The notes under the pieces: model-generated
What the model saw: the letters and a program-made list of their open reading frames with translations, nothing else
Databases searched by the model: none
What the model was told of the DNA's origin: nothing
Origin: Paramoeba atlantica
Taxonomy: Eukaryota > Protista > Discosea
Assembly: GCA_977017575.1 (NCBI GenBank)
Contig: CDRNVI010000022.1
Span: forward strand, 92,424-156,423
Reading direction: 5' to 3'
Length of the DNA: 64,000 bases
Part shown: positions 18,989 to 64,000 of the stretch, piece by piece
Position numbering within the stretch: the stretch's first letter is position 1
Layout: every line of letters starts with the position of its first letter
Program-made: the position numbers and the translations under genes

Positions 18989-18993
18989 ACCTC

Positions 18994-30466: not shown

Positions 30467-30531
30467 ACGTTTCCTGACCGGACGGCAGTCAGCACAGACC
30501 CACGTTTGCGCCCTCATAGATGGCTGGCCTG

Positions 30532-30780: not shown

Positions 30781-31045
30781 AATTGCTTCTTTTTATTATT
30801 ATTGTTATCAAAATCATAAATACTGTAACTTAAGGCAGGTTGAATTATTAGTTTTGGGCTACAACATGTGAAATTGCTAATTTGATTGCTTGTTTACAAA
30901 TCATATACCCCCCCAATGGACCTACTTGGTTCGTCTACTGAGTAAAAAAAAAAAAAAAAAAAAAATTTCGGAGATCGAATTGCTAGTTTTGGGCTCCAAA
31001 ATATGAAATTGCTAAAAAAAAAAAAAATAAAAAAAAAAAGACCTC

Positions 31046-31200
31046 CTTTAACGATAAAGATACAGTTTCTGTACCTTGTTGAATTATTTTCCTTATTCCA
31101 TCTTTTTCCAGGTACGCGGTTCCTTCTATATGACCGTCGAAGAGGAGTCGACTCATAAAACAGGATCCTGGGATCAATTTGAAGGTAATGCGCACCTGAT
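31046..31200 (+). mobile_element. SL-led family A 5' stub ending the plus-strand chain
   Basis: SL exon at 31046-31081; the A sequence stops after GCGCACCTGATT. Confidence 0.85.
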
Positions 31201-31699
31201 TGAATTGCGCATCTGAAAGACAAGAAAAAAAAATTGTTTTCTTTAGTTCAGAATCTAGGCAGGGCTAGTTCCTCGGAAAAGCGTGTCACGAAGGTTTGGT
31301 CACCCTTTTTGGCATTCTATCATGACAAGCGACATTGGATAAACGCGAGAAAGGAGATCAATAGCTACGCGTGAGCGGTTTGGAGGCTGCGAGTGTTGGG
31401 GGGCTTAGCCCCTTCACATAGTATTTACTTGTTTTATTATTGATTTTAGATTCGGTACCAAGTTATTATCTTATTAGCGTGCGCATTATAGATCGTAGTA
31501 TACATGTATTCCTGTTCTATAAAAATATTGTATGTTCAGTGAAAAGAGACAGAAGTGTGTATTTCTGGAATTAGATACTTTATATTGTTTCTGCTTTATT
31601 GAATGTTCGGACGCCTCGCTGCGGATTTCTTGAAGTGAAAAACACAACACACTCCAAAGATTGTGCTGAATGACACCCACCCTAGTTTCTTAGTACCTT

Positions 31700-42564: not shown

Positions 42565-43012
42565 TAAAAAAAAATTTTGTTAATGTACGTGACTTGTTGC
42601 TTGTTGTTTTTTTTCCTACTAAGTCTTACACCTTAATGCGACGAGGGGGGCTCCGCCCCATGAGAAGACGATTGGGAATGAGATGCGTTCATCGCGTGTA
42701 CCTCTCGTGTGCGTTTTCGGAAACTATTTCGCCCAAAAAAACGAGGGGATCAGGAACTTTGAAGCGATATCAGTCGGTCTCTAGAGCGCCCGAAATCCTT
42801 TTCAGCTCGGGTCCTGCTGTTAGTCTTCAAATGTGTCTGAAAGCCTTGTTATGGTGGGTGAAGTTCTCTGAGCTATCAAAATTGAAGGGATCAACATTGG
42901 CGACAAAAAAAAAATATCGGAAAGCTCCTTTCAATGTATCCCCATCCTTTTTTTTTTTTTTTTTTTTTTTTCATATTTTGGAGCCCAAAACTAGCAATTC
43001 GATCTCCGAAAT

Positions 43013-45063
43013 TTTTTTTTTTTTTTTTTTAAAGTTAGGCTCAAAATAGAAACAAGCAACTGTACGAAAAGTAAAAGAATGTTCAACCGAGCAAACGGCC
43101 CAAAAAACAGCAAATAAGAACCCGTTCCCACCCCCAAAAAAAAACCTTCCCCAAAAAACGAATACCCAAAGCCCCAAAAAGAAACCACCCGAGAAAACCA
43201 GCAAATAGAAACGAGGTCTTGACACCGACTCCTTCACTTTCCTACTGAGCTCCTACTCCTCTTTTCCGTAACCTAAGAGCACTGTGTCAGGGGCCGCCGC
43301 TGGGGATCGTAATACAAGAATGCGAGCTTGCGACCTCATGAGGGTAATGTTGAGAGATGAAAGGAGGTGATGCAAGGCATCCCTTTTAGGGAGGGTATCC
43401 CCTGAGTTCGCCGACTTTCTAGTTGAAATTTCCCTAAGAACCGCCATGGCGCTGGGACTCCAGGCGCCATAGGACTCTACTACCATTGCCGCGAACTTGT
43501 ACCCAGCCGTGTTAGCCTCTTCCCGTTGTCTTCTCTTGTTTTCGGTAGCATAGCGCTCCGCAAATGACCCGGCCGTCACCCCGTTAGCGTCACGGACTGA
43601 GTCCGTATATTTTTGTTGCTGTACATGGGTGACGGCAAAGTCAAGCACAAGACCCTCGCCAAGCCCGAAATTTTTAATGAAGACATCACCAGGCCTGGTG
43701 AGGGCGCCCCCGGGCCCCTTGTTTCCCAAGCTCATTTCCCTCTGGGTAGTGAACCCAGCCTTAGAACATTCAGAAGAAAATTCTGCGGCCAGGGCATTAT
43801 GCCGCGAGGTGATACCATGTCCACTTTTGCAAGCCAATGCGTGATCGCCCTCAGGACCCAACGGTTGGGTGCACTTCTCCATGGGACAAGATCGGGGACC
43901 CGGATATATTTGCTCCCCTAGCCACCAACGTACCAGAGTCCGAAACTCGGTTGGGGTATAAGCGTGGCCGTTCTTTTTCGACGGCAATACAAAAGCCCAT
44001 TCTGCTGCTCCGTGCCCCGTTTCCGAAATCCATCGAGCCCTCGTACGTGGGTCAGCGAGGGAGAGTGCTTGATGAAACTCGTGAGATGAGATGAGTGATA
44101 TGAACGTTTGTTTTTGTCGTAGTTTCGCCCGCAAGAAGAACAAAGGAAGCGACCTTCTCCATCCCACCACTCTGCGGGAATGCTGCTTCCGTGCCGGCAA
44201 GCGACGTGGTTGTAAAAAGCTTGCCACGACCCGCCGTGTGGCAAGCTCCGCCATGAACATCCCTGACCCGGGCACTGTCGAGAATCGTCTCCGTTGAGGG
44301 GAAAAGATGCGCCTTGTGAGCCGGAGTACCCATCTCCCCGTTGTCCTTGACTCAATTCTGCTGAGACAGCGTTCTCTGCAGAATTGGTTGCTGGGGGCAT
44401 TCCTCTTTGTTGCGATGGTGGGGGATAGGGGGCAGCTTGGTCGTGAATCGTGGATCCAGCGGACGCAGTCTGTATTTGGGTTGTCGTTAGTTGCGTCGAA
44501 CATGGATCAAGCTCCATTGCAAGCAAATCTTCCCTATCGCGTAACTCATTGTCGTGTACCCTATGGTCCGCCTCTTCCGTTTTTCTGAAAGTGGTTTTGT
44601 CTCGCGTCTTGGGAGTTTTTATGATGCCTCGAATGTGCCCTTTAGTACAAGGAGATGAGGTGGATGCTTTACGCCGTACGAACTTCTTTGCAACAGAATC
44701 TTTGTCAGACTGTGGTGCTTTAACCTCGTGATCTGGGCCGATGAGCACCCGAGAGTGATTCATTTCTTCGTCGCTTCCATCTTCGCGTCCTGTGTCGGGT
44801 GTCGATTTTCCGTGTGAAATCGAATCAGCTTTTTTGCACCAGTCTTCAGGGATATTTGTAGGAATGGGAGTGGTGTATAGAAGTTCGTTGTAGGTACTCG
44901 GCTGGTTAATCAGGTGCGCATTACCTTCAAATTGATCCCAGGATCCTGTTTTATGAGTCGACTCCTCTTCGACGGTCATATAGAAGGAACCGCGTACCTG
45001 GAAAAAGATGGAATAAGGAAAATAATTCAACAAGGTACAGAAACTGTATCTTTATCGTTAAAG
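43013..45063 (-). mobile_element. Chimeric internally deleted CRE-like element: SL + family A 5' part (45063-44097) fused to family H 3' part and 3'UTR
   Basis: The A sequence ends at NKRSYH. The H portion encodes WAFVLPSK...RPGDV...LDFAVTH and ends at TAG 43253-43255; poly(A) at about 43013-43030. Confidence 0.85.
45028..45063 (-). other. Spliced-leader exon copy; further array copies at 47308, 49594, 51879, 54158, 56437, 58719, 61001 and 63282 (each 36 nt)
   Basis: Identical 36-mer read at each position. Confidence 0.82.
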
Positions 45064-48000
45064 GAGGTCTTTTTTTTTGCAGTTAATAAGGGGGGAGAAG
45101 TATGAATCGCGGCATTGCCTCTATATGTTGACCCAGTAGACGAACCAAGTACATAGTAGGTCCATTGGGGGGGGTATATGAATTTAAAACAAGCAATCAA
45201 ATTAGCAAATCTTTTTATTTCCACAGAAGTATATTTTCTTTTTCTTTTTTCTTAGCCCAAAACTAGCAATTCAATCTCCCCTAAGTATATACGACAAACA
45301 AGACACAGTAAAAATAAAAACAAGCAATCCAGGCCCAATCCATTCGCGCGTTCCGGACCGGGTCTTTCGACCACTCCACGGCCTGACTTGTGAACCCGTC
45401 CCTTGCTATACGGGAGGGCGCAGGCGCGGGCCTGTGTCGACAGCGACACGGTCGCGAAACAGGATGCTGGCCGACGGGGAGGAGATTCACTGCCCGTGTA
45501 CTACCTCACTTGGGGTACCTAGCCCTCGCGGGCTAGGCGTGAGCATAGACTCTGTCGACCCGACCAGCACCCGTCCTGGATACCATGGCGTCTTCGTGCT
45601 GAAATAGGACTGTCAGTAGAGGCTTAAGCCTCTACCAAAGGATCCGCTGGGTCCTCTACGCGGATGCGCGAAACCATCATCCTGGCTTGAGAACGCATTA
45701 GCGTCACGTTCAGATCTGTTAGGAGATCGTTTCGCGCTTGGTCTCGTGAAAGGAGCCCTTTGGATGCGTTCGCCCGTTGGGTTCCGATGTCCCGGAGTAA
45801 CGCTAGCGCACTCTCGCTCCAGGAACCAAAGGATTCCACCACCATCGCTGTGAAGAGGTGTCCTGCTTTTTCTGCTTCTTGTCGCTGTCGCGCCTTGGTC
45901 TCCGCGAAGTGCTCGGCAAAAGACCCCGGGGTCACCCAGCTAGCATTGTGGACTGAGTCCACAATTCTTTTTTTTTTTTTTTTTTTAGCAATTTCATATT
46001 TTGGAGCCCAAAACTAGCAATTCGATCTCCGAATTTTTTTTTTTTTTTTTTTTTTTACTCAGTAGACGAACCAAGTAGGTCCATTGGGGGGGTATATGAT
46101 TTGTAAACAAGCAATCAAATTAGCAATTTCACATGTTGTAGCCCAAAACTAATAATTCAACCTGCCTTAAGTTACAGTATTTATGATTTTGATAACAATA
46201 ATAATAAAAAGAAGCAATTTATGCCCAATTCATTCGCGCGTTCCGGACCGGGTCTTTCGACCACTCCTCGGCCTGACTTGTGAACTCTTCCCTTGTTATA
46301 TGGGAGGGCGCAGGCGCGGGCTTGTGCCGACAGCGGCACGGTCGCGAAACAGGGTGCTGGCCGACGGGGAGGAAGTTTTAGTTCCCGACCCATGTCCTAC
46401 CTCACTTGGAGTACCTAGCCCTTGAGGGCTAGGCGTGAGCATAGACCCTGTCGGCATCGACCAGCATCCAGGCCAGCCATCTATGAGGGCGCAAACGTGG
46501 GTCTGTGCTGACTGCCGTCCGGTCAGGAAACGTTTACTCCCCCAAGCAAGAAAACGGGTCATCAGGGAGAAGGCGATTAACCATCATGCGGGCCTGAAGG
46601 CGCATGAGGGTCACGTTTAACTCCGTGAAGATTCTGCTCGTCGCCCCCCCTTCTGTCAATAACCCGCACGAGGGTCTTTTTTTTTTTTTTTTTTTTTGAC
46701 GCAGAATCAATCTACTCAATCGTAATTTACATCTCGCGGATGACCCCGTTTTTTTTTTTTAGATACTTTTTAAAGTTAGGCTCAGAATAGAAACAAGCAA
46801 CTGTACGAAAAGTAAAAGAATGTTCAACCGAGCAAACGGCCCAAAAAACAGCAAATAAGAACCCGTTCCCACCCCCAAGAAAAACCTTCCCCAAAAAACG
46901 AATACCCAAAGCCCCAAAAAGAAACCACCCGAGAAAACCAGCAAATAGAAACGATTTTTTTTTTTTTTATATACAGAATCTTTGTCAGACTGTGGTGCTT
47001 TAACCTCGTGATCTGGGCCGATGAGCACCCGAGAGTGATTCATTTCTTCGTCGCTTCCATCTTCGCGTCCTGTGTCGGGTGTCGATTTTCCGTGTGAAAT
47101 CGAATCAGCTTTTTTGCACCAGTCTTCAGGGATATTTGTAGGAATGGGAGTGGTGTATAGAAGTTCGTTGTAGGTACTCGGCTGGTTAATCAGGTGCGCA
47201 TTACCTTCAAATTGATCCCAGGATCCTGTTTTATGAGTCGACTCCTCTTCGACGGTCATATAGAAGGAACCGCGTACCTGGAAAAAGATGGAATAAGGAA
47301 AATAATTCAACAAGGTACAGAAACTGTATCTTTATCGTTAAAGGAGGTCTTTTTTTTTGCAGTTAATAAGGGGGGAGAAGTATGAATCGCGGCATTGCCT
47401 CTATATGTTGACCCAGTAGACGAACCAAGTACATAGTAGATCCATTGGGGGGGGTATATGAATTTAAAACAAGCAATCAAATTAGCAAATCTTTTTATTT
47501 CCACAGAAGTATATTTTCTTTTTCTTTTTTCTTAGCCCAAAACTAGCAATTCAATCTCCCCTAAGTATATACGACAAACAAGACACAGTAAAAATAAAAA
47601 CAAGCAATCCAGGCCCAATCCATTCGCGCGTTCCGGACCGGGTCTTTGGACCACTCCACGGCCTGACTTGTGAACCCGTCCCTTGCTATACGGGAGGGCG
47701 CAGGCGCGGGCCTGTGTCGACAGCGACACGGTCGCGAAACAGGATGCTGGCCGACGGGGAGGAGATTCACTGCCCGTGTACTACCTCACTTGGGGTACCT
47801 AGCCCTCGCGGGCTAGGCGTGAGCATAGACTCTGTCGACCCGACCAGCACCCGTCCTGGATACCATGGCGTCTTCGTGCTGAAATAGGACTGTCAGTAGA
47901 GGCTTAAGCCTCTACCAAAGGATCCGCTGGGTCCTCTACGCGGATGCGCGAAACCATCATCCTGGCTTGAGAACGCATTAGCGTCACGTTCAGATCTGTT

Positions 48001-51000
48001 AGGAGATCGTTTCGCGCTTGGTCTCGTGAAAGGAGCCCTTTGGATGCGTTCGCCCGTTGGGTTCCGATGTCCCGGAGTAACGCTAGCGCACTCTCGCTCC
48101 AGGAACCAAAGGATTCCACCACCATCGCTGTGAAGAGGTGTCCTGCTTTTTCTGCTTCTTGTCGCTGTCGCGCCTTGGTCTCCGCGAAGTGCTCGGCAAA
48201 AGACCCCGGGGTCACCCAGCTAGCATTGTGGACTGAGTCCACAATTCTTTTTTTTTTTTTTTTTTTTAGCAATTTCATATTTTGGAGCCGAAAACTAGCA
48301 ATTCGATCTCCGAATTTTTTTTTTTTTTTTTTTTTTTTTACTCAGTAGACGAACCAAGTAGGTCCATTGGGGGGGTATATGATTTGTAAACAAGCAATCA
48401 AATTAGCAATTTCACATGTTGTAGCCCAAAACTAATAATTCAACCTGCCTTAAGTTACAGTATTTATGATTTTGATAACAATAATAATAAAAAGAAGCAA
48501 TTTATGCCCAATTCATTCGCGCGTTCCGGACCGGGTCTTTCGACCACTCCTCGGCCTGACTTGTGAACTCTTCCCTTGTTATATGGGAGGGCGCAGGCGC
48601 GGGCTTGTGCCGACAGCGGCACGGTCGCGAAACAGGGTGCTGGCCGACGGGGAGGAAGTTTTAGTTCCCGACCCATGTCCTACCTCACTTGGAGTACCTA
48701 GCCCTTGAGGGCTAGGCGTGAGCATAGACCCTGTCGGCATCGACCAGCATCCAGGCCAGCCATCTATGAGGGCGCAAACGTGGGTCTGTGCTGACTGCCG
48801 TCCGGTCAGGAAACGTTTACTCCCCCAAGCAAGAAAACGGGTCATCAGGGAGAAGGCGATTAACCATCATGCGGGCCTGAAGGCGCATGAGGGTCACGTT
48901 TAACTCCGTGAAGATTCTGCTCGTCGCCCCCCCTTCTGTCAATAACCCGCACGAGGGTCTTTTTTTTTTTTTTTTTTTTTTGACGCAGAATCAATCTACT
49001 CAATCGTAATTTACATCTCGCGGATGACCCCGTTTTTTTTTTTTAGATACTTTTTAAAGTTAGGCTCAGAATAGAAACAAGCAACTGTACGAAAAGTAAA
49101 AGAATGTTCAACCGAGCAAACGGCCCAAAAAACAGCAAATAAGAACCCGTTCCCACCCCCAAGAAAAACCTTCCCCAAAAAACGAATACCCAAAGCCCCA
49201 AAAAGAAACCACCCGAGAAAACCAGCAAATAGAAACGATTTTTTTTTTTTTTTTATATACAGAATCTTTGTCAGACTGTGGTGCTTTAACCTCGTGATCT
49301 GGGCCGATGAGCACCCGAGAGTGATTCATTTCTTCGTCGCTTCCATCTTCGCGTCCTGTGTCGGGTGTCGATTTTCCGTGTGAAATCGAATCAGCTTTTT
49401 TGCACCAGTCTTCAGGGATATTTGTAGGAATGGGAGTGGTGTATAGAAGTTCGTTGTAGGTACTCGGCTGGTTAATCAGGTGCGCATTACCTTCAAATTG
49501 ATCCCAGGATCCTGTTTTATGAGTCGACTCCTCTTCGACGGTCATATAGAAGGAACCGCGTACCTGGAAAAAGATGGAATAAGGAAAATAATTCAACAAG
49601 GTACAGAAACTGTATCTTTATCGTTAAAGGAGGTCTTTTTTTTTGCAGTTAATAAGGGGGGAGAAGTATGAATCGCGGCATTGCCTCTATATGTTGACCC
49701 AGTAGACGAACCAAGTACATAGTAGATCCATTGGGGGGGGTATATGAATTTAAAACAAGCAATCAAATTAGCAAATCTTTTTATTTCCACAGAAGTATAT
49801 TTTCTTTTTCTTTTTTCTTAGCCCAAAACTAGCAATTCAATCTCCCCTAAGTATATACGACAAACAAGACACAGTAAAAATAAAAACAAGCAATCCAGGC
49901 CCAATCCATTCGCGCGTTCCGGACCGGGTCTTTGGACCACTCCACGGCCTGACTTGTGAACCCGTCCCTTGCTATACGGGAGGGCGCAGGCGCGGGCCTG
50001 TGTCGACAGCGACACGGTCGCGAAACAGGATGCTGGCCGACGGGGAGGAGATTCACTGCCCGTGTACTACCTCACTTGGGGTACCTAGCCCTCGCGGGCT
50101 AGGCGTGAGCATAGACTCTGTCGACCCGACCAGCACCCGTCCTGGATACCATGGCGTCTTCGTGCTGAAATAGGACTGTCAGTAGAGGCTTAAGCCTCTA
50201 CCAAAGGATCCGCTGGGTCCTCTACGCGGATGCGCGAAACCATCATCCTGGCTTGAGAACGCATTAGCGTCACGTTCAGATCTGTTAGGAGATCGTTTCG
50301 CGCTTGGTCTCGTGAAAGGAGCCCTTTGGATGCGTTCGCCCGTTGGGTTCCGATGTCCCGGAGTAACGCTAGCGCACTCTCGCTCCAGGAACCAAAGGAT
50401 TCCACCACCATCGCTGTGAAGAGGTGTCCTGCTTTTTCTGCTTCTTGTCGCTGTCGCGCCTTGGTCTCCGCGAAGTGCTCGGCAAAAGACCCCGGGGTCA
50501 CCCAGCTAGCATTGTGGACTGAGTCCACAATTCTTTTTTTTTTTTTTTTTTTTTAGCAATTTCATATTTTGGAGCCGAAAACTAGCAATTCGATCTCCGA
50601 ATTTTTTTTTTTTTTTTTTTTTTTTACTCAGTAGACGAACCAAGTAGGTCCATTGGGGGGGTATATGATTTGTAAACAAGCAATCAAATTAGCAATTTCA
50701 CATGTTGTAGCCCAAAACTAATAATTCAACCTGCCTTAAGTTACAGTATTTATGATTTTGATAACAATAATAATAAAAAGAAGCAATTTATGCCCAATTC
50801 ATTCGCGCGTTCCGGACCGGGTCTTTCGACCACTCCTCGGCCTGACTTGTGAACTCTTCCCTTGTTATATGGGAGGGCGCAGGCGCGGGCTTGTGCCGAC
50901 AGCGGCACGGTCGCGAAACAGGGTGCTGGCCGACGGGGAGGAAGTTTTAGTTCCCGACCCATGTCCTACCTCACTTGGAGTACCTAGCCCTTGAGGGCTA

Positions 51001-54000
51001 GGCGTGAGCATAGACCCTGTCGGCATCGACCAGCATCCAGGCCAGCCATCTATGAGGGCGCAAACGTGGGTCTGTGCTGACTGCCGTCCGGTCAGGAAAC
51101 GTTTACTCCCCCAAGCAAGAAAACGGGTCATCAGGGAGAAGGCGATTAACCATCATGCGGGCCTGAAGGCGCATGAGGGTCACGTTTAACTCCGTGAAGA
51201 TTCTGCTCGTCGCCCCCCCTTCTGTCAATAACCCGCACGAGGGTCTTTTTTTTTTTTTTTTTTTTTGACGCAGAATCAATCTACTCAATCGTAATTTACA
51301 TCTCGCGGATGACCCCGTTTTTTTTTTTTAGATACTTTTTAAAGTTAGGCTCAGAATAGAAACAAGCAACTGTACGAAAAGTAAAAGAATGTTCAACCGA
51401 GCAAACGGCCCAAAAAACAGCAAATAAGAACCCGTTCCCACCCCCAAGAAAAACCTTCCCCAAAAAACGAATACCCAAAGCCCCAAAAAGAAACCACCCG
51501 AGAAAACCAGCAAATAGAAACGATTTTTTTTTTTTTTTTATATACAGAATCTTTGTCAGACTGTGGTGCTTTAACCTCGTGATCTGGGCCGATGAGCACC
51601 CGAGAGTGATTCATTTCTTCGTCGCTTCCATCTTCGCGTCCTGTGTCGGGTGTCGATTTTCCGTGTGAAATCGAATCAGCTTTTTTGCACCAGTCTTCAG
51701 GGATATTTGTAGGAATGGGAGTGGTGTATAGAAGTTCGTTGTAGGTACTCGGCTGGTTAATCAGGTGCGCATTACCTTCAAATTGATCCCAGGATCCTGT
51801 TTTATGAGTCGACTCCTCTTCGACGGTCATATAGAAGGAACCGCGTACCTGGAAAAAGATGGAATAAGGAAAATAATTCAACAAGGTACAGAAACTGTAT
51901 CTTTATCGTTAAAGGAGGTCTTTTTTTTTGCAGTTAATAAGGGGGGAGAAGTATGAATCGCGGCATTGCCTCTATATGTTGACCCAGTAGACGAACCAAG
52001 TACATAGTAGGTCCATTGGGGGGGGTATATGAATTTAAAACAAGCAATCAAATTAGCAAATCTTTTTATTTCCACAGAAGTATATTTTCTTTTTCTTTTT
52101 TCTTAGCCCAAAACTAGCAATTCAATCTCCCCTAAGTATATACGACAAACAAGACACAGTAAAAATAAAAACAAGCAATCCAGGCCCAATCCATTCGCGC
52201 GTTCCGGACCGGGTCTTTCGACCACTCCACGGCCTGACTTGTGAACCCGTCCCTTGCTATACGGGAGGGCGCAGGCGCGGGCCTGTGTCGACAGCGACAC
52301 GGTCGCGAAACAGGATGCTGGCCGACGGGGAGGAGATTCACTGCCCGTGTACTACCTCACTTGGGGTACCTAGCCCTCGCGGGCTAGGCGTGAGCATAGA
52401 CTCTGTCGACCCGACCAGCACCCGTCCTGGATACCATGGCGTCTTCGTGCTGAAATAGGGCTGTCAGTAGAGGCTTAAGCCTCTACCAAAGGATCCGCTG
52501 GGTCCTCTACGCGGATGCGCGAAACCATCATCCTGGCTTGAGAACGCATTAGCGTCACGTTCAGATCTGTTAGGAGATCGTTTCGCGCTTGGTCTCGTGA
52601 AAGGAGCCCTTTGGATGCGTTCGCCCGTTGGGTTCCGATGTCCCGGAGTAACGCTAGCGCACTCTCGCTCCAGGAACCAAAGGATTCCACCACCATCGCT
52701 GTGAAGAGGTGTCCTGCTTTTTCTGCTTCTTGTCGCTGTCGCGCCTTGGTCTCCGCGAAGTGCTCGGCAAAAGACCCCGGGGTCACCCAGCTAGCATTGT
52801 GGACTGAGTCCACAATTCTTTTTTTTTTTTTTTTTTTTTAGCAATTTCATATTTTGGAGCCCAAAACTAGCAATTCGATCTCCGAATTTTTTTTTTTTTT
52901 TTTTTTTTTTACTCAGTAGACGAACCAAGTAGGTCCATTGGGGGGGTATATGATTTGTAAACAAGCAATCAAATTAGCAATTTCACATGTTGTAGCCCAA
53001 AACTAATAATTCAACCTGCCTTAAGTTACAGTATTTATGATTTTGATAACAATAATAATAAAAAGAAGCAATTTATGCCCAATTCATTCGCGCGTTCCGG
53101 ACCGGGTCTTTCGACCACTCCTCGGCCTGACTTGTGAACTCTTCCCTTGTTATATGGGAGGGCGCAGGCGCGGGCTTGTGCCGACAGCGGCACGGTCGCG
53201 AAACAGGGTGCTGGCCGACGGGGAGGAAGTTTTAGTTCCCGACCCATGTCCTACCTCACTTGGAGTACCTAGCCCTTGAGGGCTAGGCGTGAGCATAGAC
53301 CCTGTCGGCATCGACCAGCATCCAGGCCAGCCATCTATGAGGGCGCAAACGTGGGTCTGTGCTGACTGCCGTCCGGTCAGGAAACGTTTACTCCCCCAAG
53401 CAAGAAAACGGGTCATCAGGGAGAAGGCGATTAACCATCATGCGGGCCTGAAGGCGCATGAGGGTCACGTTTAACTCCGTGAAGATTCTGCTCGTCGCCC
53501 CCCCTTCTGTCAATAACCCGCACGAGGGTCTTTTTTTTTTTTTTTTTTGACGCAGAATCAATCTACTCAATCGTAATTTACATCTCGCGGATGACCCCGT
53601 TTTTTTTTTTAGATACTTTTTAAAGTTAGGCTCAGAATAGAAACAAGCAACTGTACGAAAAGTAAAAGAATGTTCAACCGAGCAAACGGCCCAAAAAACA
53701 GCAAATAAGAACCCTTTCCCACCCCCAAGAAAAACCTTCCCCAAAAAACGAATACCCAAAGCCCCAAAAAGAAACCACCCGAGAAAACCAGCAAATAGAA
53801 ACGATTTTTTTTTTTTTTATATACAGAATCTTTGTCAGACTGTGGTGCTTTAACCTCGTGATCTGGGCCGATGAGCACCCGAGAGTGATTCATTTCTTCG
53901 TCGCTTCCATCTTCGCGTCCTGTGTCGGGTGTCGATTTTCCGTGTGAAATCGAATCAGCTTTTTTGCACCAGTCTTCAGGGATATTTGTAGGAATGGGAG

Positions 54001-57000
54001 TGGTGTATAGAAGTTCGTTGTAGGTACTCGGCTGGTTAATCAGGTGCGCATTACCTTCAAATTGATCCCAGGATCCTGTTTTATGAGTCGACTCCTCTTC
54101 GACGGTCATATAGAAGGAACCGCGTACCTGGAAAAAGATGGAATAAGGAAAATAATTCAACAAGGTACAGAAACTGTATCTTTATCGTTAAAGGAGGTCT
54201 TTTTTTTGCAGTTAATAAGGGGGGAGAAGTATGAATCGCGGCATTGCCTCTATATGTTGACCCAGTAGACGAACCAAGTACATAGTAGGTCCATTGGGGG
54301 GGGTATATGAATTTAAAACAAGCAATCAAATTAGCAAATCTTTTTATTTCCACAGAAGTATATTTTCTTTTTCTTTTTTCTTAGCCCAAAACTAGCAATT
54401 CAATCTCCCCTAAGTATATACGACAAACAAGACACAGTAAAAATAAAAACAAGCAATCCAGGCCCAATCCATTCGCGCGTTCCGGACCGGGTCTTTCGAC
54501 CACTCCACGGCCTGACTTGTGAACCCGTCCCTTGCTATACGGGAGGGCGCAGGCGCGGGCCTGTGTCGACAGCGACACGGTCGCGAAACAGGATGCTGGC
54601 CGACGGGGAGGAGATTCACTGCCCGTGTACTACCTCACTTGGGGTACCTAGCCCTCGCGGGCTAGGCGTGAGCATAGACTCTGTCGACCCGACCAGCACC
54701 CGTCCTGGATACCATGGCGTCTTCGTGCTGAAATAGGACTGTCAGTAGAGGCTTAAGCCTCTACCAAAGGATCCGCTGGGTCCTCTACGCGGATGCGCGA
54801 AACCATCATCCTGGCTTGAGAACGCATTAGCGTCACGTTCAGATCTGTTAGGAGATCGTTTCGCGCTTGGTCTCGTGAAAGGAGCCCTTTGGATGCGTTC
54901 GCCCGTTGGGTTCCGATGTCCCGGAGTAACGCTAGCGCACTCTCGCTCCAGGAACCAAAGGATTCCACCACCATCGCTGTGAAGAGGTGTCCTGCTTTTT
55001 CTGCTTCTTGTCGCTGTCGCGCCTTGGTCTCCGCGAAGTGCTCGGCAAAAGACCCCGGGGTCACCCAGCTAGCATTGTGGACTGAGTCCACAATTCTTTT
55101 TTTTTTTTTTTTTTTTTAGCAATTTCATATTTTGGAGCCGAAAACTAGCAATTCGATCTCCGAATTTTTTTTTTTTTTTTTTTTTTTTACTCAGTAGACG
55201 AACCAAGTAGGTCCATTGGGGGGGTATATGATTTGTAAACAAGCAATCAAATTAGCAATTTCACATGTTGTAGCCCAAAACTAATAATTCAACCTGCCTT
55301 AAGTTACAGTATTTATGATTTTGATAACAATAATAATAAAAAGAAGCAATTTATGCCCAATTCATTCGCGCGTTCCGGACCGGGTCTTTCGACCACTCCT
55401 CGGCCTGACTTGTGAACTCTTCCCTTGTTATATGGGAGGGCGCAGGCGCGGGCTTGTGCCGACAGCGGCACGGTCGCGAAACAGGGTGCTGGCCGACGGG
55501 GAGGAAGTTTTAGTTCCCGACCCATGTCCTACCTCACTTGGAGTACCTAGCCCTTGAGGGCTAGGCGTGAGCATAGACCCTGTCGGCATCGACCAGCATC
55601 CAGGCCAGCCATCTATGAGGGCGCAAACGTGGGTCTGTGCTGACTGCCGTCCGGTCAGGAAACGTTTACTCCCCCAAGCAAGAAAACGGGTCATCAGGGA
55701 GAAGGCGATTAACCATCATGCGGGCCTGAAGGCGCATGAGGGTCACGTTTAACTCCGTGAAGATTCTGCTCGTCGCCCCCCCTTCTGTCAATAACCCGCA
55801 CGAGGGTCTTTTTTTTTTTTTTTTTTTTGACGCAGAATCAATCTACTCAATCGTAATTTACATCTCGCGGATGACCCCGTTTTTTTTTTTAGATACTTTT
55901 TAAAGTTAGGCTCAGAATAGAAACAAGCAACTGTACGAAAAGTAAAAGAATGTTCAACCGAGCAAACGGCCCAAAAAACAGCAAATAAGAACCCTTTCCC
56001 ACCCCCAAGAAAAACCTTCCCCAAAAAACGAATACCCAAAGCCCCAAAAAGAAACCACCCGAGAAAACCAGCAAATAGAAACGATTTTTTTTTTTTTATA
56101 TACAGAATCTTTGTCAGACTGTGGTGCTTTAACCTCGTGATCTGGGCCGATGAGCACCCGAGAGTGATTCATTTCTTCGTCGCTTCCATCTTCGCGTCCT
56201 GTGTCGGGTGTCGATTTTCCGTGTGAAATCGAATCAGCTTTTTTGCACCAGTCTTCAGGGATATTTGTAGGAATGGGAGTGGTGTATAGAAGTTCGTTGT
56301 AGGTACTCGGCTGGTTAATCAGGTGCGCATTACCTTCAAATTGATCCCAGGATCCTGTTTTATGAGTCGACTCCTCTTCGACGGTCATATAGAAGGAACC
56401 GCGTACCTGGAAAAAGATGGAATAAGGAAAATAATTCAACAAGGTACAGAAACTGTATCTTTATCGTTAAAGGAGGTCTTTTTTTTTGCAGTTAATAAGG
56501 GGGGAGAAGTATGAATCGCGGCATTGCCTCTATATGTTGACCCAGTAGACGAACCAAGTACATAGTAGGTCCATTGGGGGGGGTATATGAATTTAAAACA
56601 AGCAATCAAATTAGCAAATCTTTTTATTTCCACAGAAGTATATTTTCTTTTTCTTTTTTCTTAGCCCAAAACTAGCAATTCAATCTCCCCTAAGTATATA
56701 CGACAAACAAGACACAGTAAAAATAAAAACAAGCAATCCAGGCCCAATCCATTCGCGCGTTCCGGACCGGGTCTTTCGACCACTCCACGGCCTGACTTGT
56801 GAACCCGTCCCTTGCTATACGGGAGGGCGCAGGCGCGGGCCTGTGTCGACAGCGACACGGTCGCGAAACAGGATGCTGGCCGACGGGGAGGAGATTCACT
56901 GCCCGTGTACTACCTCACTTGGGGTACCTAGCCCTCGCGGGCTAGGCGTGAGCATAGACTCTGTCGACCCGACCAGCACCCGTCCTGGATACCATGGCGT

Positions 57001-60000
57001 CTTCGTGCTGAAATAGGACTGTCAGTAGAGGCTTAAGCCTCTACCAAAGGATCCGCTGGGTCCTCTACGCGGATGCGCGAAACCATCATCCTGGCTTGAG
57101 AACGCATTAGCGTCACGTTCAGATCTGTTAGGAGATCGTTTCGCGCTTGGTCTCGTGAAAGGAGCCCTTTGGATGCGTTCGCCCGTTGGGTTCCGATGTC
57201 CCGGAGTAACGCTAGCGCACTCTCGCTCCAGGAACCAAAGGATTCCACCACCATCGCTGTGAAGAGGTGTCCTGCTTTTTCTGCTTCTTGTCGCTGTCGC
57301 GCCTTGGTCTCCGCGAAGTGCTCGGCAAAAGACCCCGGGGTCACCCAGCTAGCATTGTGGACTGAGTCCACAATTCTTTTTTTTTTTTTTTTTTTTAGCA
57401 ATTTCATATTTTGGAGCCGAAAACTAGCAATTCGATCTCCGAATTTTTTTTTTTTTTTTTTTTTTTTACTCAGTAGACGAACCAAGTAGGTCCATTGGGG
57501 GGGTATATGATTTGTAAACAAGCAATCAAATTAGCAATTTCACATGTTGTAGCCCAAAACTAATAATTCAACCTGCCTTAAGTTACAGTATTTATGATTT
57601 TGATAACAATAATAATAAAAAGAAGCAATTTATGCCCAATTCATTCGCGCGTTCCGGACCGGGTCTTTCGACCACTCCTCGGCCTGACTTGTGAACTCTT
57701 CCCTTGTTATATGGGAGGGCGCAGGCGCGGGCTTGTGCCGACAGCGGCACGGTCGCGAAACAGGGTGCTGGCCGACGGGGAGGAAGTTTTAGTTCCCGAC
57801 CCATGTCCTACCTCACTTGGAGTACCTAGCCCTTGAGGGCTAGGCGTGAGCATAGACCCTGTCGGCATCGACCAGCATCCAGGCCAGCCATCTATGAGGG
57901 CGCAAACGTGGGTCTGTGCTGACTGCCGTCCGGTCAGGAAACGTTTACTCCCCCAAGCAAGAAAACGGGTCATCAGGGAGAAGGCGATTAACCATCATGC
58001 GGGCCTGAAGGCGCATGAGGGTCACGTTTAACTCCGTGAAGATTCTGCTCGTCGCCCCCCCTTCTGTCAATAACCCGCACGAGGGTCTTTTTTTTTTTTT
58101 TTTTTTTGACGCAGAATCAATCTACTCAATCGTAATTTACATCTCGCGGATGACCCCGTTTTTTTTTTTTAGATACTTTTTAAAGTTAGGCTCAGAATAG
58201 AAACAAGCAACTGTACGAAAAGTAAAAGAATGTTCAACCGAGCAAACGGCCCAAAAAACAGCAAATAAGAACCCTTTCCCACCCCCAAGAAAAACCTTCC
58301 CCAAAAAACGAATACCCAAAGCCCCAAAAAGAAACCACCCGAGAAAACCAGCAAATAGAAACGATTTTTTTTTTTTTTTATATACAGAATCTTTGTCAGA
58401 CTGTGGTGCTTTAACCTCGTGATCTGGGCCGATGAGCACCCGAGAGTGATTCATTTCTTCGTCGCTTCCATCTTCGCGTCCTGTGTCGGGTGTCGATTTT
58501 CCGTGTGAAATCGAATCAGCTTTTTTGCACCAGTCTTCAGGGATATTTGTAGGAATGGGAGTGGTGTATAGAAGTTCGTTGTAGGTACTCGGCTGGTTAA
58601 TCAGGTGCGCATTACCTTCAAATTGATCCCAGGATCCTGTTTTATGAGTCGACTCCTCTTCGACGGTCATATAGAAGGAACCGCGTACCTGGAAAAAGAT
58701 GGAATAAGGAAAATAATTCAACAAGGTACAGAAACTGTATCTTTATCGTTAAAGGAGGTCTTTTTTTTTGCAGTTAATAAGGGGGGAGAAGTATGAATCG
58801 CGGCATTGCCTCTATATGTTGACCCAGTAGACGAACCAAGTACATAGTAGGTCCATTGGGGGGGGTATATGAATTTAAAACAAGCAATCAAATTAGCAAA
58901 TCTTTTTATTTCCACAGAAGTATATTTTCTTTTTCTTTTTTCTTAGCCCAAAACTAGCAATTCAATCTCCCCTAAGTATATACGACAAACAAGACACAGT
59001 AAAAATAAAAACAAGCAATCCAGGCCCAATCCATTCGCGCGTTCCGGACCGGGTCTTTCGACCACTCCACGGCCTGACTTGTGAACCCGTCCCTTGCTAT
59101 ACGGGAGGGCGCAGGCGCGGGCCTGTGTCGACAGCGACACGGTCGCGAAACAGGATGCTGGCCGACGGGGAGGAGATTCACTGCCCGTGTACTACCTCAC
59201 TTGGGGTACCTAGCCCTCGCGGGCTAGGCGTGAGCATAGACTCTGTCGACCCGACCAGCACCCGTCCTGGATACCATGGCGTCTTCGTGCTGAAATAGGA
59301 CTGTCAGTAGAGGCTTAAGCCTCTACCAAAGGATCCGCTGGGTCCTCTACGCGGATGCGCGAAACCATCATCCTGGCTTGAGAACGCATTAGCGTCACGT
59401 TCAGATCTGTTAGGAGATCGTTTCGCGCTTGGTCTCGTGAAAGGAGCCCTTTGGATGCGTTCGCCCGTTGGGTTCCGATGTCCCGGAGTAACGCTAGCGC
59501 ACTCTCGCTCCAGGAACCAAAGGATTCCACCACCATCGCTGTGAAGAGGTGTCCTGCTTTTTCTGCTTCTTGTCGCTGTCGCGCCTTGGTCTCCGCGAAG
59601 TGCTCGGCAAAAGACCCCGGGGTCACCCAGCTAGCATTGTGGACTGAGTCCACAATTCTTTTTTTTTTTTTTTTTTTTTAGCAATTTCATATTTTGGAGC
59701 CCAAAACTAGCAATTCGATCTCCGAATTTTTTTTTTTTTTTTTTTTTTTTACTCAGTAGACGAACCAAGTAGGTCCATTGGGGGGGTATATGATTTGTAA
59801 ACAAGCAATCAAATTAGCAATTTCACATGTTGTAGCCCAAAACTAATAATTCAACCTGCCTTAAGTTACAGTATTTATGATTTTGATAACAATAATAATA
59901 AAAAGAAGCAATTTATGCCCAATTCATTCGCGCGTTCCGGACCGGGTCTTTCGACCACTCCTCGGCCTGACTTGTGAACTCTTCCCTTGTTATATGGGAG

Positions 60001-63000
60001 GGCGCAGGCGCGGGCTTGTGCCGACAGCGGCACGGTCGCGAAACAGGGTGCTGGCCGACGGGGAGGAAGTTTTAGTTCCCGACCCATGTCCTACCTCACT
60101 TGGAGTACCTAGCCCTTGAGGGCTAGGCGTGAGCATAGACCCTGTCGGCATCGACCAGCATCCAGGCCAGCCATCTATGAGGGCGCAAACGTGGGTCTGT
60201 GCTGACTGCCGTCCGGTCAGGAAACGTTTACTCCCCCAAGCAAGAAAACGGGTCATCAGGGAGAAGGCGATTAACCATCATGCGGGCCTGAAGGCGCATG
60301 AGGGTCACGTTTAACTCCGTGAAGATTCTGCTCGTCGCCCCCCCTTCTGTCAATAACCCGCACGAGGGTCTTTTTTTTTTTTTTTTTTTTGACGCAGAAT
60401 CAATCTACTCAATCGTAATTTACATCTCGCGGATGACCCCGTTTTTTTTTTTTAGATACTTTTTAAAGTTAGGCTCAGAATAGAAACAAGCAACTGTACG
60501 AAAAGTAAAAGAATGTTCAACCGAGCAAACGGCCCAAAAAACAGCAAATAAGAACCCTTTCCCACCCCCAAGAAAAACCTTCCCCAAAAAACGAATACCC
60601 AAAGCCCCAAAAAGAAACCACCCGAGAAAACCAGCAAATAGAAACGATTTTTTTTTTTTTTATATACAGAATCTTTGTCAGACTGTGGTGCTTTAACCTC
60701 GTGATCTGGGCCGATGAGCACCCGAGAGTGATTCATTTCTTCGTCGCTTCCATCTTCGCGTCCTGTGTCGGGTGTCGATTTTCCGTGTGAAATCGAATCA
60801 GCTTTTTTGCACCAGTCTTCAGGGATATTTGTAGGAATGGGAGTGGTGTATAGAAGTTCGTTGTAGGTACTCGGCTGGTTAATCAGGTGCGCATTACCTT
60901 CAAATTGATCCCAGGATCCTGTTTTATGAGTCGACTCCTCTTCGACGGTCATATAGAAGGAACCGCGTACCTGGAAAAAGATGGAATAAGGAAAATAATT
61001 CAACAAGGTACAGAAACTGTATCTTTATCGTTAAAGGAGGTCTTTTTTTTTGCAGTTAATAAGGGGGGAGAAGTATGAATCGCGGCATTGCCTCTATATG
61101 TTGACCCAGTAGACGAACCAAGTACATAGTAGGTCCATTGGGGGGGGTATATGAATTTAAAACAAGCAATCAAATTAGCAAATCTTTTTATTTCCACAGA
61201 AGTATATTTTCTTTTTCTTTTTTCTTAGCCCAAAACTAGCAATTCAATCTCCCCTAAGTATATACGACAAACAAGACACAGTAAAAATAAAAACAAGCAA
61301 TCCAGGCCCAATCCATTCGCGCGTTCCGGACCGGGTCTTTCGACCACTCCACGGCCTGACTTGTGAACCCGTCCCTTGCTATACGGGAGGGCGCAGGCGC
61401 GGGCCTGTGTCGACAGCGACACGGTCGCGAAACAGGATGCTGGCCGACGGGGAGGAGATTCACTGCCCGTGTACTACCTCACTTGGGGTACCTAGCCCTC
61501 GCGGGCTAGGCGTGAGCATAGACTCTGTCGACCCGACCAGCACCCGTCCTGGATACCATGGCGTCTTCGTGCTGAAATAGGACTGTCAGTAGAGGCTTAA
61601 GCCTCTACCAAAGGATCCGCTGGGTCCTCTACGCGGATGCGCGAAACCATCATCCTGGCTTGAGAACGCATTAGCGTCACGTTCAGATCTGTTAGGAGAT
61701 CGTTTCGCGCTTGGTCTCGTGAAAGGAGCCCTTTGGATGCGTTCGCCCGTTGGGTTCCGATGTCCCGGAGTAACGCTAGCGCACTCTCGCTCCAGGAACC
61801 AAAGGATTCCACCACCATCGCTGTGAAGAGGTGTCCTGCTTTTTCTGCTTCTTGTCGCTGTCGCGCCTTGGTCTCCGCGAAGTGCTCGGCAAAAGACCCC
61901 GGGGTCACCCAGCTAGCATTGTGGACTGAGTCCACAATTCTTTTTTTTTTTTTTTTTTTTTAGCAATTTCATATTTTGGAGCCGAAAACTAGCAATTCGA
62001 TCTCCGAATTTTTTTTTTTTTTTTTTTTTTTACTCAGTAGACGAACCAAGTAGGTCCATTGGGGGGGTATATGATTTGTAAACAAGCAATCAAATTAGCA
62101 ATTTCACATGTTGTAGCCCAAAACTAATAATTCAACCTGCCTTAAGTTACAGTATTTATGATTTTGATAACAATAATAATAAAAAGAAGCAATTTATGCC
62201 CAATTCATTCGCGCGTTCCGGACCGGGTCTTTCGACCACTCCTCGGCCTGACTTGTGAACTCTTCCCTTGTTATATGGGAGGGCGCAGGCGCGGGCTTGT
62301 GCCGACAGCGGCACGGTCGCGAAACAGGGTGCTGGCCGACGGGGAGGAAGTTTTAGTTCCCGACCCATGTCCTACCTCACTTGGAGTACCTAGCCCTTGA
62401 GGGCTAGGCGTGAGCATAGACCCTGTCGGCATCGACCAGCATCCAGGCCAGCCATCTATGAGGGCGCAAACGTGGGTCTGTGCTGACTGCCGTCCGGTCA
62501 GGAAACGTTTACTCCCCCAAGCAAGAAAACGGGTCATCAGGGAGAAGGCGATTAACCATCATGCGGGCCTGAAGGCGCATGAGGGTCACGTTTAACTCCG
62601 TGAAGATTCTGCTCGTCGCCCCCCCTTCTGTCAATAACCCGCACGAGGGTCTTTTTTTTTTTTTTTTTTTTGACGCAGAATCAATCTACTCAATCGTAAT
62701 TTACATCTCGCGGATGACCCCGTTTTTTTTTTTTAGATACTTTTTAAAGTTAGGCTCAGAATAGAAACAAGCAACTGTACGAAAAGTAAAAGAATGTTCA
62801 ACCGAGCAAACGGCCCAAAAAACAGCAAATAAGAACCCTTTCCCACCCCCAAGAAAAACCTTCCCCAAAAAACGAATACCCAAAGCCCCAAAAAGAAACC
62901 ACCCGAGAAAACCAGCAAATAGAAACGATTTTTTTTTTTTTTATATACAGAATCTTTGTCAGACTGTGGTGCTTTAACCTCGTGATCTGGGCCGATGAGC

Positions 63001-64000
63001 ACCCGAGAGTGATTCATTTCTTCGTCGCTTCCATCTTCGCGTCCTGTGTCGGGTGTCGATTTTCCGTGTGAAATCGAATCAGCTTTTTTGCACCAGTCTT
63101 CAGGGATATTTGTAGGAATGGGAGTGGTGTATAGAAGTTCGTTGTAGGTACTCGGCTGGTTAATCAGGTGCGCATTACCTTCAAATTGATCCCAGGATCC
63201 TGTTTTATGAGTCGACTCCTCTTCGACGGTCATATAGAAGGAACCGCGTACCTGGAAAAAGATGGAATAAGGAAAATAATTCAACAAGGTACAGAAACTG
63301 TATCTTTATCGTTAAAGGAGGTCTTTTTTTTTGCAGTTAATAAGGGGGGAGAAGTATGAATCGCGGCATTGCCTCTATATGTTGACCCAGTAGACGAACC
63401 AAGTACATAGTAGGTCCATTGGGGGGGGTATATGAATTTAAAACAAGCAATCAAATTAGCAAATCTTTTTATTTCCACAGAAGTATATTTTCTTTTTCTT
63501 TTTTCTTAGCCCAAAACTAGCAATTCAATCTCCCCTAAGTATATACGACAAACAAGACACAGTAAAAATAAAAACAAGCAATCCAGGCCCAATCCATTCG
63601 CGCGTTCCGGACCGGGTCTTTCGACCACTCCACGGCCTGACTTGTGAACCCGTCCCTTGCTATACGGGAGGGCGCAGGCGCGGGCCTGTGTCGACAGCGA
63701 CACGGTCGCGAAACAGGATGCTGGCCGACGGGGAGGAGATTCACTGCCCGTGTACTACCTCACTTGGGGTACCTAGCCCTCGCGGGCTAGGCGTGAGCAT
63801 AGACTCTGTCGACCCGACCAGCACCCGTCCTGGATACCATGGCGTCTTCGTGCTGAAATAGGACTGTCAGTAGAGGCTTAAGCCTCTACCAAAGGATCCG
63901 CTGGGTCCTCTACGCGGATGCGCGAAACCATCATCCTGGCTTGAGAACGCATTAGCGTCACGTTCAGATCTGTTAGGAGATCGTTTCGCGCTTGGTCTCG
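45064..64000 (-). repeat. Tandem array of a ~2,282 bp composite retroelement unit, 8 complete copies plus a partial one, continuing past the window edge
   Basis: SL-to-SL spacing is 2280, 2286, 2285, 2279, 2279, 2282, 2282 and 2281 bp. Differences are homopolymer lengths and a few SNVs. Confidence 0.97.

What the first reader, a model, noticed from the sequence alone, without database searches (positions are those of the whole stretch)
45064..64000. Tandem array of a six-part retro-concatemer
Seen: in sense orientation each 2.28 kb unit is SL-A5' (about 0.39 kb)-pA, F (H 3'UTR, about 0.19 kb)-pA, G (51 bp)-pA, A3' (about 0.62 kb)-pA, E (47 bp)-pA, B3' (about 0.88 kb)-pA, with no TSDs. An inverted single copy lies at 17.9-20.4 kb, and the same B3'/SL-A junction precedes full-length A at 25.9 kb. 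Established: R2-type RTs jump between template ends, and retrotransposon arrays build or border chromosome ends in Drosophila, Giardia and Cryptococcus (Cnl1). Inference: the unit arose by serial insertion or template jumping and was then amplified as a satellite. It retains an SL start and RT-recognition 3' ends, so it could also move as one non-autonomous RNA. Its 5' ends face the right edge, the polarity of HeT-A/TART if that side is distal; the chromosomal position is unknown.
Basis: partly seen in the sequence, partly recalled or inferred. Interest (0 to 1): 0.8.

Follow-up and report, generated by a model that had tools for sequence, protein, structure and literature searches.

The report
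Tandem array of retrotransposon scraps
A 2.28-kb patchwork of six poly(A)-tailed retrotransposon fragments is repeated head-to-tail at least 14 times inside a transposon-rich stretch of a spliced-leader protist's chromosome; it is a transposon-derived satellite that grew by unequal recombination, not a chromosome end built by retrotransposons.

Summary
On the minus strand, window 44693-64000 carries 8.5 copies of a 2278-2286-bp unit. The unit has six fragments of fixed length (381, 194, 51, 620, 47 and 889 bp), each followed by 9-25 A. Twelve units differ at only 7 substitution sites.

The window ends where contig C22 ends. The same array, on the same strand, opens contig C21 (1-11741), and C21 runs on for another 770 kb. 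C21 holds the array's sense-5' edge and C22 its sense-3' edge. This is therefore most likely one internal array of at least 32 kb, split by an assembly gap.

Every internal A5' segment combines the 5' junction of the 3'-edge copy with the 3' junction of the 5'-edge copy. That is the expected product of unequal crossing-over between two A 5' fragments lying 1.9 kb apart.

The unit is one local case of a genome-wide habit: retro-fragments joined poly(A)-to-5'-end in one orientation. Other readers of this scan noted such chains on other DNA of this genome.

Canonical TTTAGGG telomeres exist. No dispersed copies of the unit exist. The telomere idea is not supported and the "moves as one RNA" idea has no support. 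It is a new member of a known kind, the transposon-derived macrosatellite.

The parts
44693..64000 (-). Tandem array: 8.5 units of 2278-2286 bp. It runs off the end of contig C22 and continues on C21:1-11741.
49255..49635 (-). Reference unit, part 1 (381 bp): GACCTC + spliced leader nt 3-38 + family A nt 1-~337 after the leader + ATAT. Tail of 16 A at 49239-49254.
   Evidence: SL RNA gene read
49045..49238 (-). Part 2, F: the last 194 nt of the family H 3'UTR. Tail of 12 A.
48982..49032 (-). Part 3, G (51 bp): an internal piece (ORF end plus about 20 nt) of a five-copy repeat family. Tail of 22 A that the source does not template.
48340..48959 (-). Part 4 (620 bp): GAC + 3' part of family A. 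It ends about 50 nt before the usual A 3' end, at an internal A5 run. Tail of 25 A. It contains the conserved structured 3'UTR core.
48268..48314 (-). Part 5, E (47 bp): an internal piece of the 3'UTR of an abundant A/B-like family (91 genomic matches). Tail of 20 A.
47359..48247 (-). Part 6, B3' (889 bp): a 5'-truncated family B copy (C-terminal nuclease coding end plus 3'UTR). Tail of 9 A. Among the copies read, this truncation point occurs only on this contig.
44095..45069 (-). 3'-edge copy: GACCTC-SL-A nt 1-975, 99.7% identical to full-length A. It reads on past the point where array units switch to ATAT-poly(A).
42948..44094 (-). Tail of the chain beyond the array: a family H 3' part joined directly to A with no poly(A) (RLE-type ORF end plus an F copy 96% like the unit's). 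Then 19 A, a shortened E, and 24 A.
12397..20365 (+). Inverted relative ('Locus II'): A 3' kb (split by insertions at 12761-13911 and 14445-17876, TSDs CCGTAA and ACTGTA) -pA-E-pA-B3'-pA9-SL-A5'-pA-F-pA-G-pA-A3'-pA-E-pA.
25017..31201 (+). 'Locus III': pA25-B3'-pA9-GACCTC-SL-A (full length, 25940-30943)-pA22-E-pA26-GACCTC-SL-A5' (162 nt). This is the long form of the same junction set.

Best explanation
This is a transposon-derived macrosatellite lying inside a chromosome.

Step 1 (shown as anatomy; mechanism inferred). cDNA fragments of polyadenylated RNAs from R2-like non-LTR retrotransposons with a restriction-like endonuclease (families A, B, H and an E-type family), plus one other repeat (G), piled up poly(A)-to-5'-end in one orientation. 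They did so either by repeated insertion into each other's poly(A) tracts or by reverse-transcriptase template jumps. The result was the chain Y-pA-[SL'-A5'-ATAT-pA]-[F-pA]-[G-pA]-[A3'-pA]-[E-pA]-[B3'-pA9]-[SL-A...].

Step 2 (shown by edge anatomy). The two A 5' segments in this chain were direct repeats 1.9 kb apart. Unequal crossing-over between them duplicated the 2.28-kb interval. Further unequal exchange and gene conversion expanded and homogenised it to at least 14 units.

Step 3 (shown). The assembler could not span the array, so it sits half on the end of C22 and half on the start of C21.

The DNA-encoded spliced leader is a relic of a trans-spliced template RNA, not a start signal.
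For: Fixed six-part unit with only poly(A) length and 7 substitution sites varying among 12 units.

The array occurs only on the C22 end and the C21 start, on the same strand. C21 holds one sense-5' edge (11741) and C22 one sense-3' edge (window 45069).

The 5'-edge A5' has its own junction: another element's 21 A, then GTTAAATCT, a leader with 2 differences, and 1 further difference. It shares the ATAT-pA-F end. The 3'-edge A5' has the B3'-A9-GACCTC junction but reads on into A. All internal copies combine the second copy's 5' junction with the first copy's 3' junction.

The B3'-A9-GACCTC junction is invariant in every junction read in the window (9 array copies) and at two neighbouring loci. 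One unit has 8 A. Independent A insertions have different junctions (5' edge).

Independent chains exist elsewhere: 18 fragments of 21-1050 bp, each followed by 10-39 A, with no T runs, at C9:290.4-295.9 kb, and likewise on C185 and C17. About a third of spliced-leader relics (84 of 258 on one strand) lie within 16 nt of a run of 8 or more A, with variable junction bases.

The reverse transcriptases match R2 best among solved structures, and the ORF ends carry CCHC...RHN...RPGD...LDFAV.
Against: The join of C22 to C21 is inferred, not read. The two contig ends are out of phase, so at least 1.28 kb is missing.

Both edge copies of A5' are followed by family H sequence (the F copies are 96% alike), which is a coincidence under this model.

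The inverted Locus II already carries the recombinant junction together with A sequence absent from the array. Extra recombination or inversion steps are therefore needed, and the order of events is not settled.

Nothing here distinguishes serial insertion from template jumping in step 1.
Confidence: 0.75

Rival explanations
1. The reverse transcriptase made the tandem array. Either a composite unit-length RNA was copied repeatedly by end-to-end template jumps, or it was reinserted into its own poly(A) tail, so the unit is a non-autonomous mobile element.
For: The unit carries two copies of a conserved, strongly folding 3'UTR core (-106 kcal/mol, 2 compensatory pairs), which could be the reverse transcriptase's binding site. 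R2-type enzymes perform serial template jumps in vitro (PMC8594491, PMC8857657). Poly(A)-to-5'-end chains are common in this genome.
Against: No junction within the unit is more variable than the others, and the unit-to-unit junction is identical in every copy read. Real insertion junctions vary. There are no dispersed copies. The edge anatomy fits a DNA crossover. The nearby inverted locus is not a copy of an array transcript.
Confidence: 0.08
2. The array is a retrotransposon-built or retrotransposon-bordered chromosome end of the HeT-A/TART, Giardia GilM/GilT or Zepp type, with 5' ends pointing distally.
For: The array runs to the end of contig C22 with 5' ends facing outward. The start of C22 and the end of C21 lack telomere repeats, so chromosome positions are unknown.
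Against: Canonical CCCTAAA tracts of about 0.9 kb cap contigs C205 and C138, with 4652 overlapping 35-mer hits genome-wide. The subtelomere of C205 shares nothing with this window. The array reappears at the start of a 782-kb contig with the opposite polarity towards that end, and it has a defined internal edge there. Units are identical, not variably truncated.
Confidence: 0.03
3. The array is an assembly artefact: a collapsed or over-expanded repeat, or a circular 2.28-kb molecule read as a concatemer.
For: Two contigs break inside it. Poly(A) length differences could partly be homopolymer read errors.
Against: Units carry distinct substitution variants in a non-random order. Both edges are anchored in different flanking sequence, with the diverged edge copy typical of real arrays.
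Confidence: 0.03
4. The array is maintained for a function. It could be a source of double-stranded RNA and small RNAs against families A, B and H (it faces inverted copies 14-32 kb away), or part of a transposon-filled centromere core. This is compatible with the origin given above.
For: Inverted relatives lie at 12.4-31.2 kb on the opposite strand. The genome has seven Piwi-domain loci with open frames of 926-976 aa. The surrounding 100 kb or more is retroelement-rich.
Against: There are no expression, small-RNA or kinetochore data. Homogeneity is explained by recent unequal exchange without any selection.
Confidence: 0.1

Closest known systems
Satellites derived from non-LTR retrotransposon pieces, such as the cetacean common satellite from the L1 3' end, the HeT-A 3'UTR-derived satellite and chicken HinfI/CR1 (reviewed in PMC9659126)
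   Same: Head-to-tail repeats whose monomer is homologous to dispersed retrotransposons, mostly their 3' parts. They are homogenised by unequal exchange and lie in repeat-rich DNA.
   Different: Here the monomer is a six-piece mosaic from five source families, with every piece keeping its own poly(A) tail. One piece keeps a spliced-leader relic. Both seeding repeats can still be read at the array edges.
Zepp LINE clusters of Chlorella and Coccomyxa (PMC3446292)
   Same: Non-LTR elements accumulate as clusters of nested, truncated copies at a few sites. These were first taken for telomere structures and later found mostly inside chromosomes, possibly at centromeres.
   Different: Zepp clusters hold one family and are not a regular tandem repeat of a fixed composite unit. 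I could not read the original Zepp papers here.
HeT-A/TART/TAHRE telomere arrays of Drosophila (PMC5537684)
   Same: Head-to-tail, poly(A)-to-5'-end chains of non-LTR elements in one polarity.
   Different: Drosophila lacks telomerase repeats, and its units are independent insertions with variable 5' truncation at the true chromosome end. Here TTTAGGG telomeres exist, the units are identical, and the array has edges on both sides.
Chimeric retrocopies made by template jumps (tripartite chimera of Magnaporthe, PMC2104539; serial jumping by R2-type enzymes in vitro, PMC8594491 and PMC8857657)
   Same: Pieces of different RNAs are joined in one orientation, often with a few extra bases at the joints. 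The enzyme class is the R2-like one.
   Different: The described chimeras are two or three parts fused directly, with one terminal poly(A) and one TSD. Here each part has its own 9-25 A tail, and chains reach 18 parts elsewhere in the genome.
CRE/SLACS/CZAR elements of trypanosomatids (own knowledge)
   Same: Non-LTR elements with a restriction-like endonuclease, in a spliced-leader organism, linked to the leader sequence.
   Different: Those elements insert at a fixed site inside SL RNA genes. Here the leader sits at the element's own 5' end, preceded by another element's poly(A), with no SL gene promoter or intron around it.
Spliced-leader relics on retrogenes of dinoflagellates (PMC12014239)
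   Same: A DNA-encoded leader at the 5' end marks a copy made from a trans-spliced RNA.
   Different: Here the tagged RNAs are the retrotransposons themselves, and the leader is of the kinetoplastid type.

Membership tests
Transposon-derived satellite / macrosatellite | Many head-to-tail copies of one unit | tested here: met
   8.5 units on C22 and 5.2 on C21, with a period of 2278-2286 bp
Transposon-derived satellite / macrosatellite | Unit homologous to dispersed mobile elements | tested here: met
   A, B, H and E-type pieces match tens of dispersed copies at 87-100% identity
Transposon-derived satellite / macrosatellite | DNA-level amplification: invariant junctions, homogenised interior, diverged edge unit | tested here: met
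   7 variable sites among 12 units. The edge copy differs in its first ~65 nt only.
Telomeric retrotransposon array (HeT-A/TART type) | Lies at the physical chromosome end | tested here: not met
   The array has a 3' edge on C22 and a 5' edge on C21, and C21 continues for 770 kb. The join itself was not read.
Telomeric retrotransposon array (HeT-A/TART type) | Successive units are independent insertions with variable 5' truncation | tested here: not met
   All units have identical segment lengths and junctions
Telomeric retrotransposon array (HeT-A/TART type) | Replaces telomerase repeats | tested here: not met
   CCCTAAA tracts sit at contig starts C205 and C138. A TERT RBD profile search was uninformative because the control rang nowhere.
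Template-jump chimeric retrocopy | Parts from different RNAs, same orientation, joined 5' end to 3' end | tested here: met
Template-jump chimeric retrocopy | Whole chimera flanked by one TSD and made in one event | tested here: inconclusive
   No TSD can be recognised. The flanks are other poly(A) tracts or other elements.
R2-like (RLE-bearing) non-LTR retrotransposon (source families A, B, H, X) | Single long ORF with a reverse transcriptase followed by a CCHC knuckle and a restriction-like nuclease motif | tested here: met
   RVT_1 in Pfam. Best solved-structure matches are R2 proteins. CCHC...RHN...RPGD...LDFAV read. No phylogeny was made.
CRE/SLACS/CZAR | Inserted at a fixed position inside SL RNA gene exons | tested here: not met
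   The leader lies at the element's 5' end after poly(A), without the SL gene's upstream sequence or its GT intron
SL RNA gene | Leader exon followed by GT intron, in the 2.56-kb gene repeat | tested here: not met
   The unit's leader is followed by family A sequence. True genes are on C97 and C107. No Rfam hit in the unit.

The most novel reading that the evidence does not exclude
The array is the visible tip of an undescribed activity. In this protist, R2-like reverse transcriptases would routinely string together many short, A-tailed RNA pieces into long one-way chains. Some of these pieces end at non-canonical sites and look like oligoadenylated decay fragments (E, G and A5' with its ATAT-A tail). 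These chains would then seed satellites that serve as small-RNA traps or centromere cores.
Probability: 0.15. Interest if true: 0.65.

Novelty: new member of a known kind. Interest (0 to 1): 0.35.

Why it matters
It removes a tempting but wrong reading, a retrotransposon telomere in a protist, and explains one assembly gap between two contigs. It is also an unusually clear example of how a satellite is born. Both seeding repeats survive at the array edges, and the recombinant junction is present in every unit. The underlying chain-building by R2-like elements that carry spliced-leader 5' ends deserves its own study. That feature is genome-wide and is not specific to this array.

Tried and rejected
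- TRF found nothing, because its period limit is 500.
- (TTAGGG)4 occurs once only; the real repeat is TTTAGGG.
- A Pfam Telomerase_RBD search of the genome found nothing, but the control also found nothing, so it is uninformative.
- I first read 'B3'' as a discrete 0.9-kb non-autonomous element, because about 25 loci matched from the same query position. I rejected this: those copies continue upstream, and the apparent poly(A) match was an A-rich stretch of family B.
- I first read the inverted copy as 1.09 array units, possibly a retrocopy. I rejected this after finding that it continues into A sequence absent from the array.
- The continuation of the element left of 17877 is not in the window, so no empty site was recovered.
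- Variants shared between C21 and C22 units fit one array but do not prove adjacency.
- There is no Rfam family in the unit.
- Pfam gave only RVT_1 for the A ORF at E up to 0.01, so the LsmAD-like reading of the A N-terminus is not backed by Pfam.
- The original Zepp papers are not held.
Full report
OBSERVATION

Direct repeats are spaced 2278-2286 bp from window 44693 to 64000, at 99-100% identity. TRF missed them only because its period limit is 500.

Read on the minus strand and cut at every run of nine or more A, each unit gives the same six segments:
- 381 bp: GACCTC, the spliced leader from its third base, the first ~337 bases of family A, then ATAT
- 194 bp: F
- 51 bp: G
- 620 bp: GAC plus the A 3' part
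- 47 bp: E
- 889 bp: the B 3' part

The tails are 13-16, 11-12, 18-22, 23-25, 19-21 and 8-9 A. Segment lengths never vary. Twelve complete units differ at only seven substitution sites.

IDENTITY OF THE PIECES

The leader is real. SL RNA genes on C97 and C107 (2.56-kb repeats) read AACTTTAACGATAAAGATACAGTTTCTGTACCTTGTTG followed by GT.

Families A, B, H and X each encode a long ORF with a reverse transcriptase. Their best solved-structure matches are R2 proteins. The ORFs end in a CCHC...RHN...RPGD...LDFAV nuclease-type domain. They are therefore R2-like, restriction-like-endonuclease elements. I made no phylogeny.

F is the end of an H 3'UTR. At 43214-43014 it follows an H ORF stop by 39 nt.

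B3' is a true 5' truncation. All five other B copies that I read continue upstream of that point, so this truncation marks one lineage.

E belongs to an abundant family (91 matches) but is an internal 3'UTR piece. G is an internal piece of a five-copy repeat, and its source does not template its tail. The A 3' part stops about 50 nt short of the usual A end. Three of the six tails therefore sit at non-canonical ends.

The A and B 3' parts share a conserved ~230-nt core. It is predicted to fold strongly (-106 kcal/mol, two compensatory pairs). This fits, but does not prove, an enzyme-recognition element. No Rfam family matches the unit.

CHROMOSOMAL POSITION

The window is C22:92424-156423, and C22 is 156423 bases long, so the window's right edge is a contig end.

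The unit-specific junction and the G marker occur elsewhere only at C21:1-11741, on the same strand, as 5.2 further units. C21 is 782 kb long.

On C21 the array has its sense-5' edge, and on C22 its sense-3' edge. The two contig ends are out of phase, so at least 1.28 kb plus n units is missing. The simplest reading is one array of at least 14 units (about 32 kb) broken by the assembler.

If these were two terminal arrays, they would point in opposite ways relative to their ends. The first 40 kb of C21, and the 10 kb left of the window, are also retroelement-rich.

TELOMERES

(TTAGGG)4 occurs once. That hit led to C205, which starts with about 0.9 kb of CCCTAAA. C138 does the same, and the 35-mer of TTTAGGG has 4652 overlapping hits.

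The C205 subtelomere shares nothing with this window. The start of C22 and the end of C21 carry no telomere repeats. A TERT profile search was uninformative.

HOW THE ARRAY AROSE

The 5'-edge A5' copy on C21 follows 21 A of an unrelated element. It has GTTAAATCT instead of GACCTC, two differences in the leader, and one more just after it. From there on it is identical to internal copies and ends in ATAT-poly(A)-F.

The 3'-edge copy (45069-44095) has the B3'-A9-GACCTC junction but reads on into family A for 975 nt. There it is fused directly to an H 3' part.

Every internal copy has the 5' junction of the second copy and the 3' junction of the first. That is what unequal crossing-over between two direct repeats 1.9 kb apart produces. 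Repeated exchange and conversion explain the growth and the homogeneity.

The unit junction (TGC-A9-GACCTC-leader) is the same in all copies read in the window, with one unit at A8. Independent A insertions have other junctions, for example 22 A + T + leader just left of the window. This argues against units made one by one through RNA.

THE NEIGHBOURING LOCI

The 'inverted single copy' is larger than described. It starts at 12397 as the last kilobase of A. Two later insertions with 6-bp TSDs (CCGTAA, ACTGTA) split it. It then runs pA-E-pA-B3'-pA9-SL-A5'-pA-F-pA-G-pA-A3'-pA-E-pA up to 20365. An SL-led element X, a second B3'-pA9-GACCTC-SL junction, a full-length A, E, and a short third A5' follow.

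These loci share the array's idiosyncratic junctions, so they are related to it by DNA rearrangement. The exact order of events is not resolved. The inverted locus contains A sequence that the array lacks, so it is not a retrocopy of an array transcript.

THE CHAIN HABIT

Same-strand chains of poly(A)-ended fragments are common in this genome.
- C9:290.4-295.9 kb holds 18 fragments of 21-1050 bp, each followed by 10-39 A, with no T runs.
- C185 and C17 show the same pattern.
- Of 512 exact leader relics, 84 of the 258 on the reverse strand lie within 16 nt of eight or more A. Junction bases vary: none, T, C, GAAT, CGT, or a leader trimmed by up to nine bases.

This fits either insertion into poly(A) tracts, where TSDs would be invisible, or jumps of the enzyme from a capped 5' end onto another A-tailed RNA. 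The second is known for R2-type enzymes in vitro (PMC8594491, PMC8857657) and was inferred for chimeric retrocopies (PMC2104539). I cannot tell the two apart. Other first-stage notes of this scan describe such chains on other DNA of this genome. I treated them as leads only.

COMPARISON AND VERDICT

Satellites made from retrotransposon pieces are well known (PMC9659126). Zepp clusters show how such piles can be mistaken for telomere structures (PMC3446292).

This array is a clear new example. Its unusual features are a six-part, tail-by-tail mosaic monomer and edges that still record the seeding crossover.

The telomere idea is not supported, and the idea that the unit moves as one RNA has no support. 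A role as a small-RNA source or a centromere component is possible, given seven Piwi-domain loci and the inverted copies nearby, but it is untested.

Noticed in passing
L002 (G000:C205:1-8000) 1-925; G000:C138:21-750: The genome's telomere repeat is TTTAGGG (CCCTAAA at contig starts), not the TTAGGG usual for kinetoplastids. On C205 a purine-only A/G-rich stretch follows it.
   Followed up: partly
L009, L010 (G000:C97, C107): SL RNA genes lie in 2.56-kb tandem repeats on two short contigs. The leader is 38 nt, of the kinetoplastid/diplonemid type, followed by GTATGAG.
   Followed up: partly
genome-wide; examples and L001:5519-5560: Poly(A)|leader junctions often read A(n)-T-CTTTAACG or A(n)-C-CTTTAACG where the gene has AACTTTAACG. 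This may be misreading of the modified cap-proximal bases, which would mean the templates were genuinely capped, trans-spliced RNAs. How an SL-led copy could be trans-spliced again at the same site (no AG before AATTATTTT) is unexplained.
   Followed up: no
L013 (G000:C9:290400-295931): A non-tandem chain of 18 same-strand retro-fragments, some only 21-87 bp long, each with a 10-39 A tail.
   Followed up: partly
window 12761-13911 and 14445-17876: Two insertions into a family A 3' part have clean 6-bp target duplications (CCGTAA, ACTGTA). The larger one (minus strand, RT ORF 14723-17785) has no poly(A) at its 3' end and a 99.9% identical copy on C21:27298-29252.
   Followed up: partly
window 44095: Family A nt 1-975 is fused directly to a family H 3' part with no poly(A) between them. 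This is either a recombinant element or an insertion with loss of the rest of A.
   Followed up: no
window 48957-48959, 49630-49635, 48242-48247: Extra bases at the 5' joints of three segments all start with G (GAC, GACCTC, GAATTG). The A5' and A3' joints begin almost alike (GACCTCC and GACCCTC).
   Followed up: no
L005/L004 (G000:C21:15016-17967 and 20981-23932): A 984-aa ORF with no Pfam match is duplicated with a 5965-bp period just beyond the array's edge on C21.
   Followed up: no
G000:C1:9752-25058: Four leader relics are spaced exactly 5093 bp apart on the minus strand, without poly(A) upstream. This is another tandem repeat of an SL-containing element, of a different kind.
   Followed up: no
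window 40848-41038: A 95-bp unit is repeated twice (95% match).
   Followed up: no
G000:C49, C29, C26, C42: Seven Piwi-domain loci (open frames 926-976 aa), several in near-identical local duplicates. RNA interference is probably present.
   Followed up: no
Pfam gave no such hit for the A ORF at E up to 0.01.
   Followed up: partly
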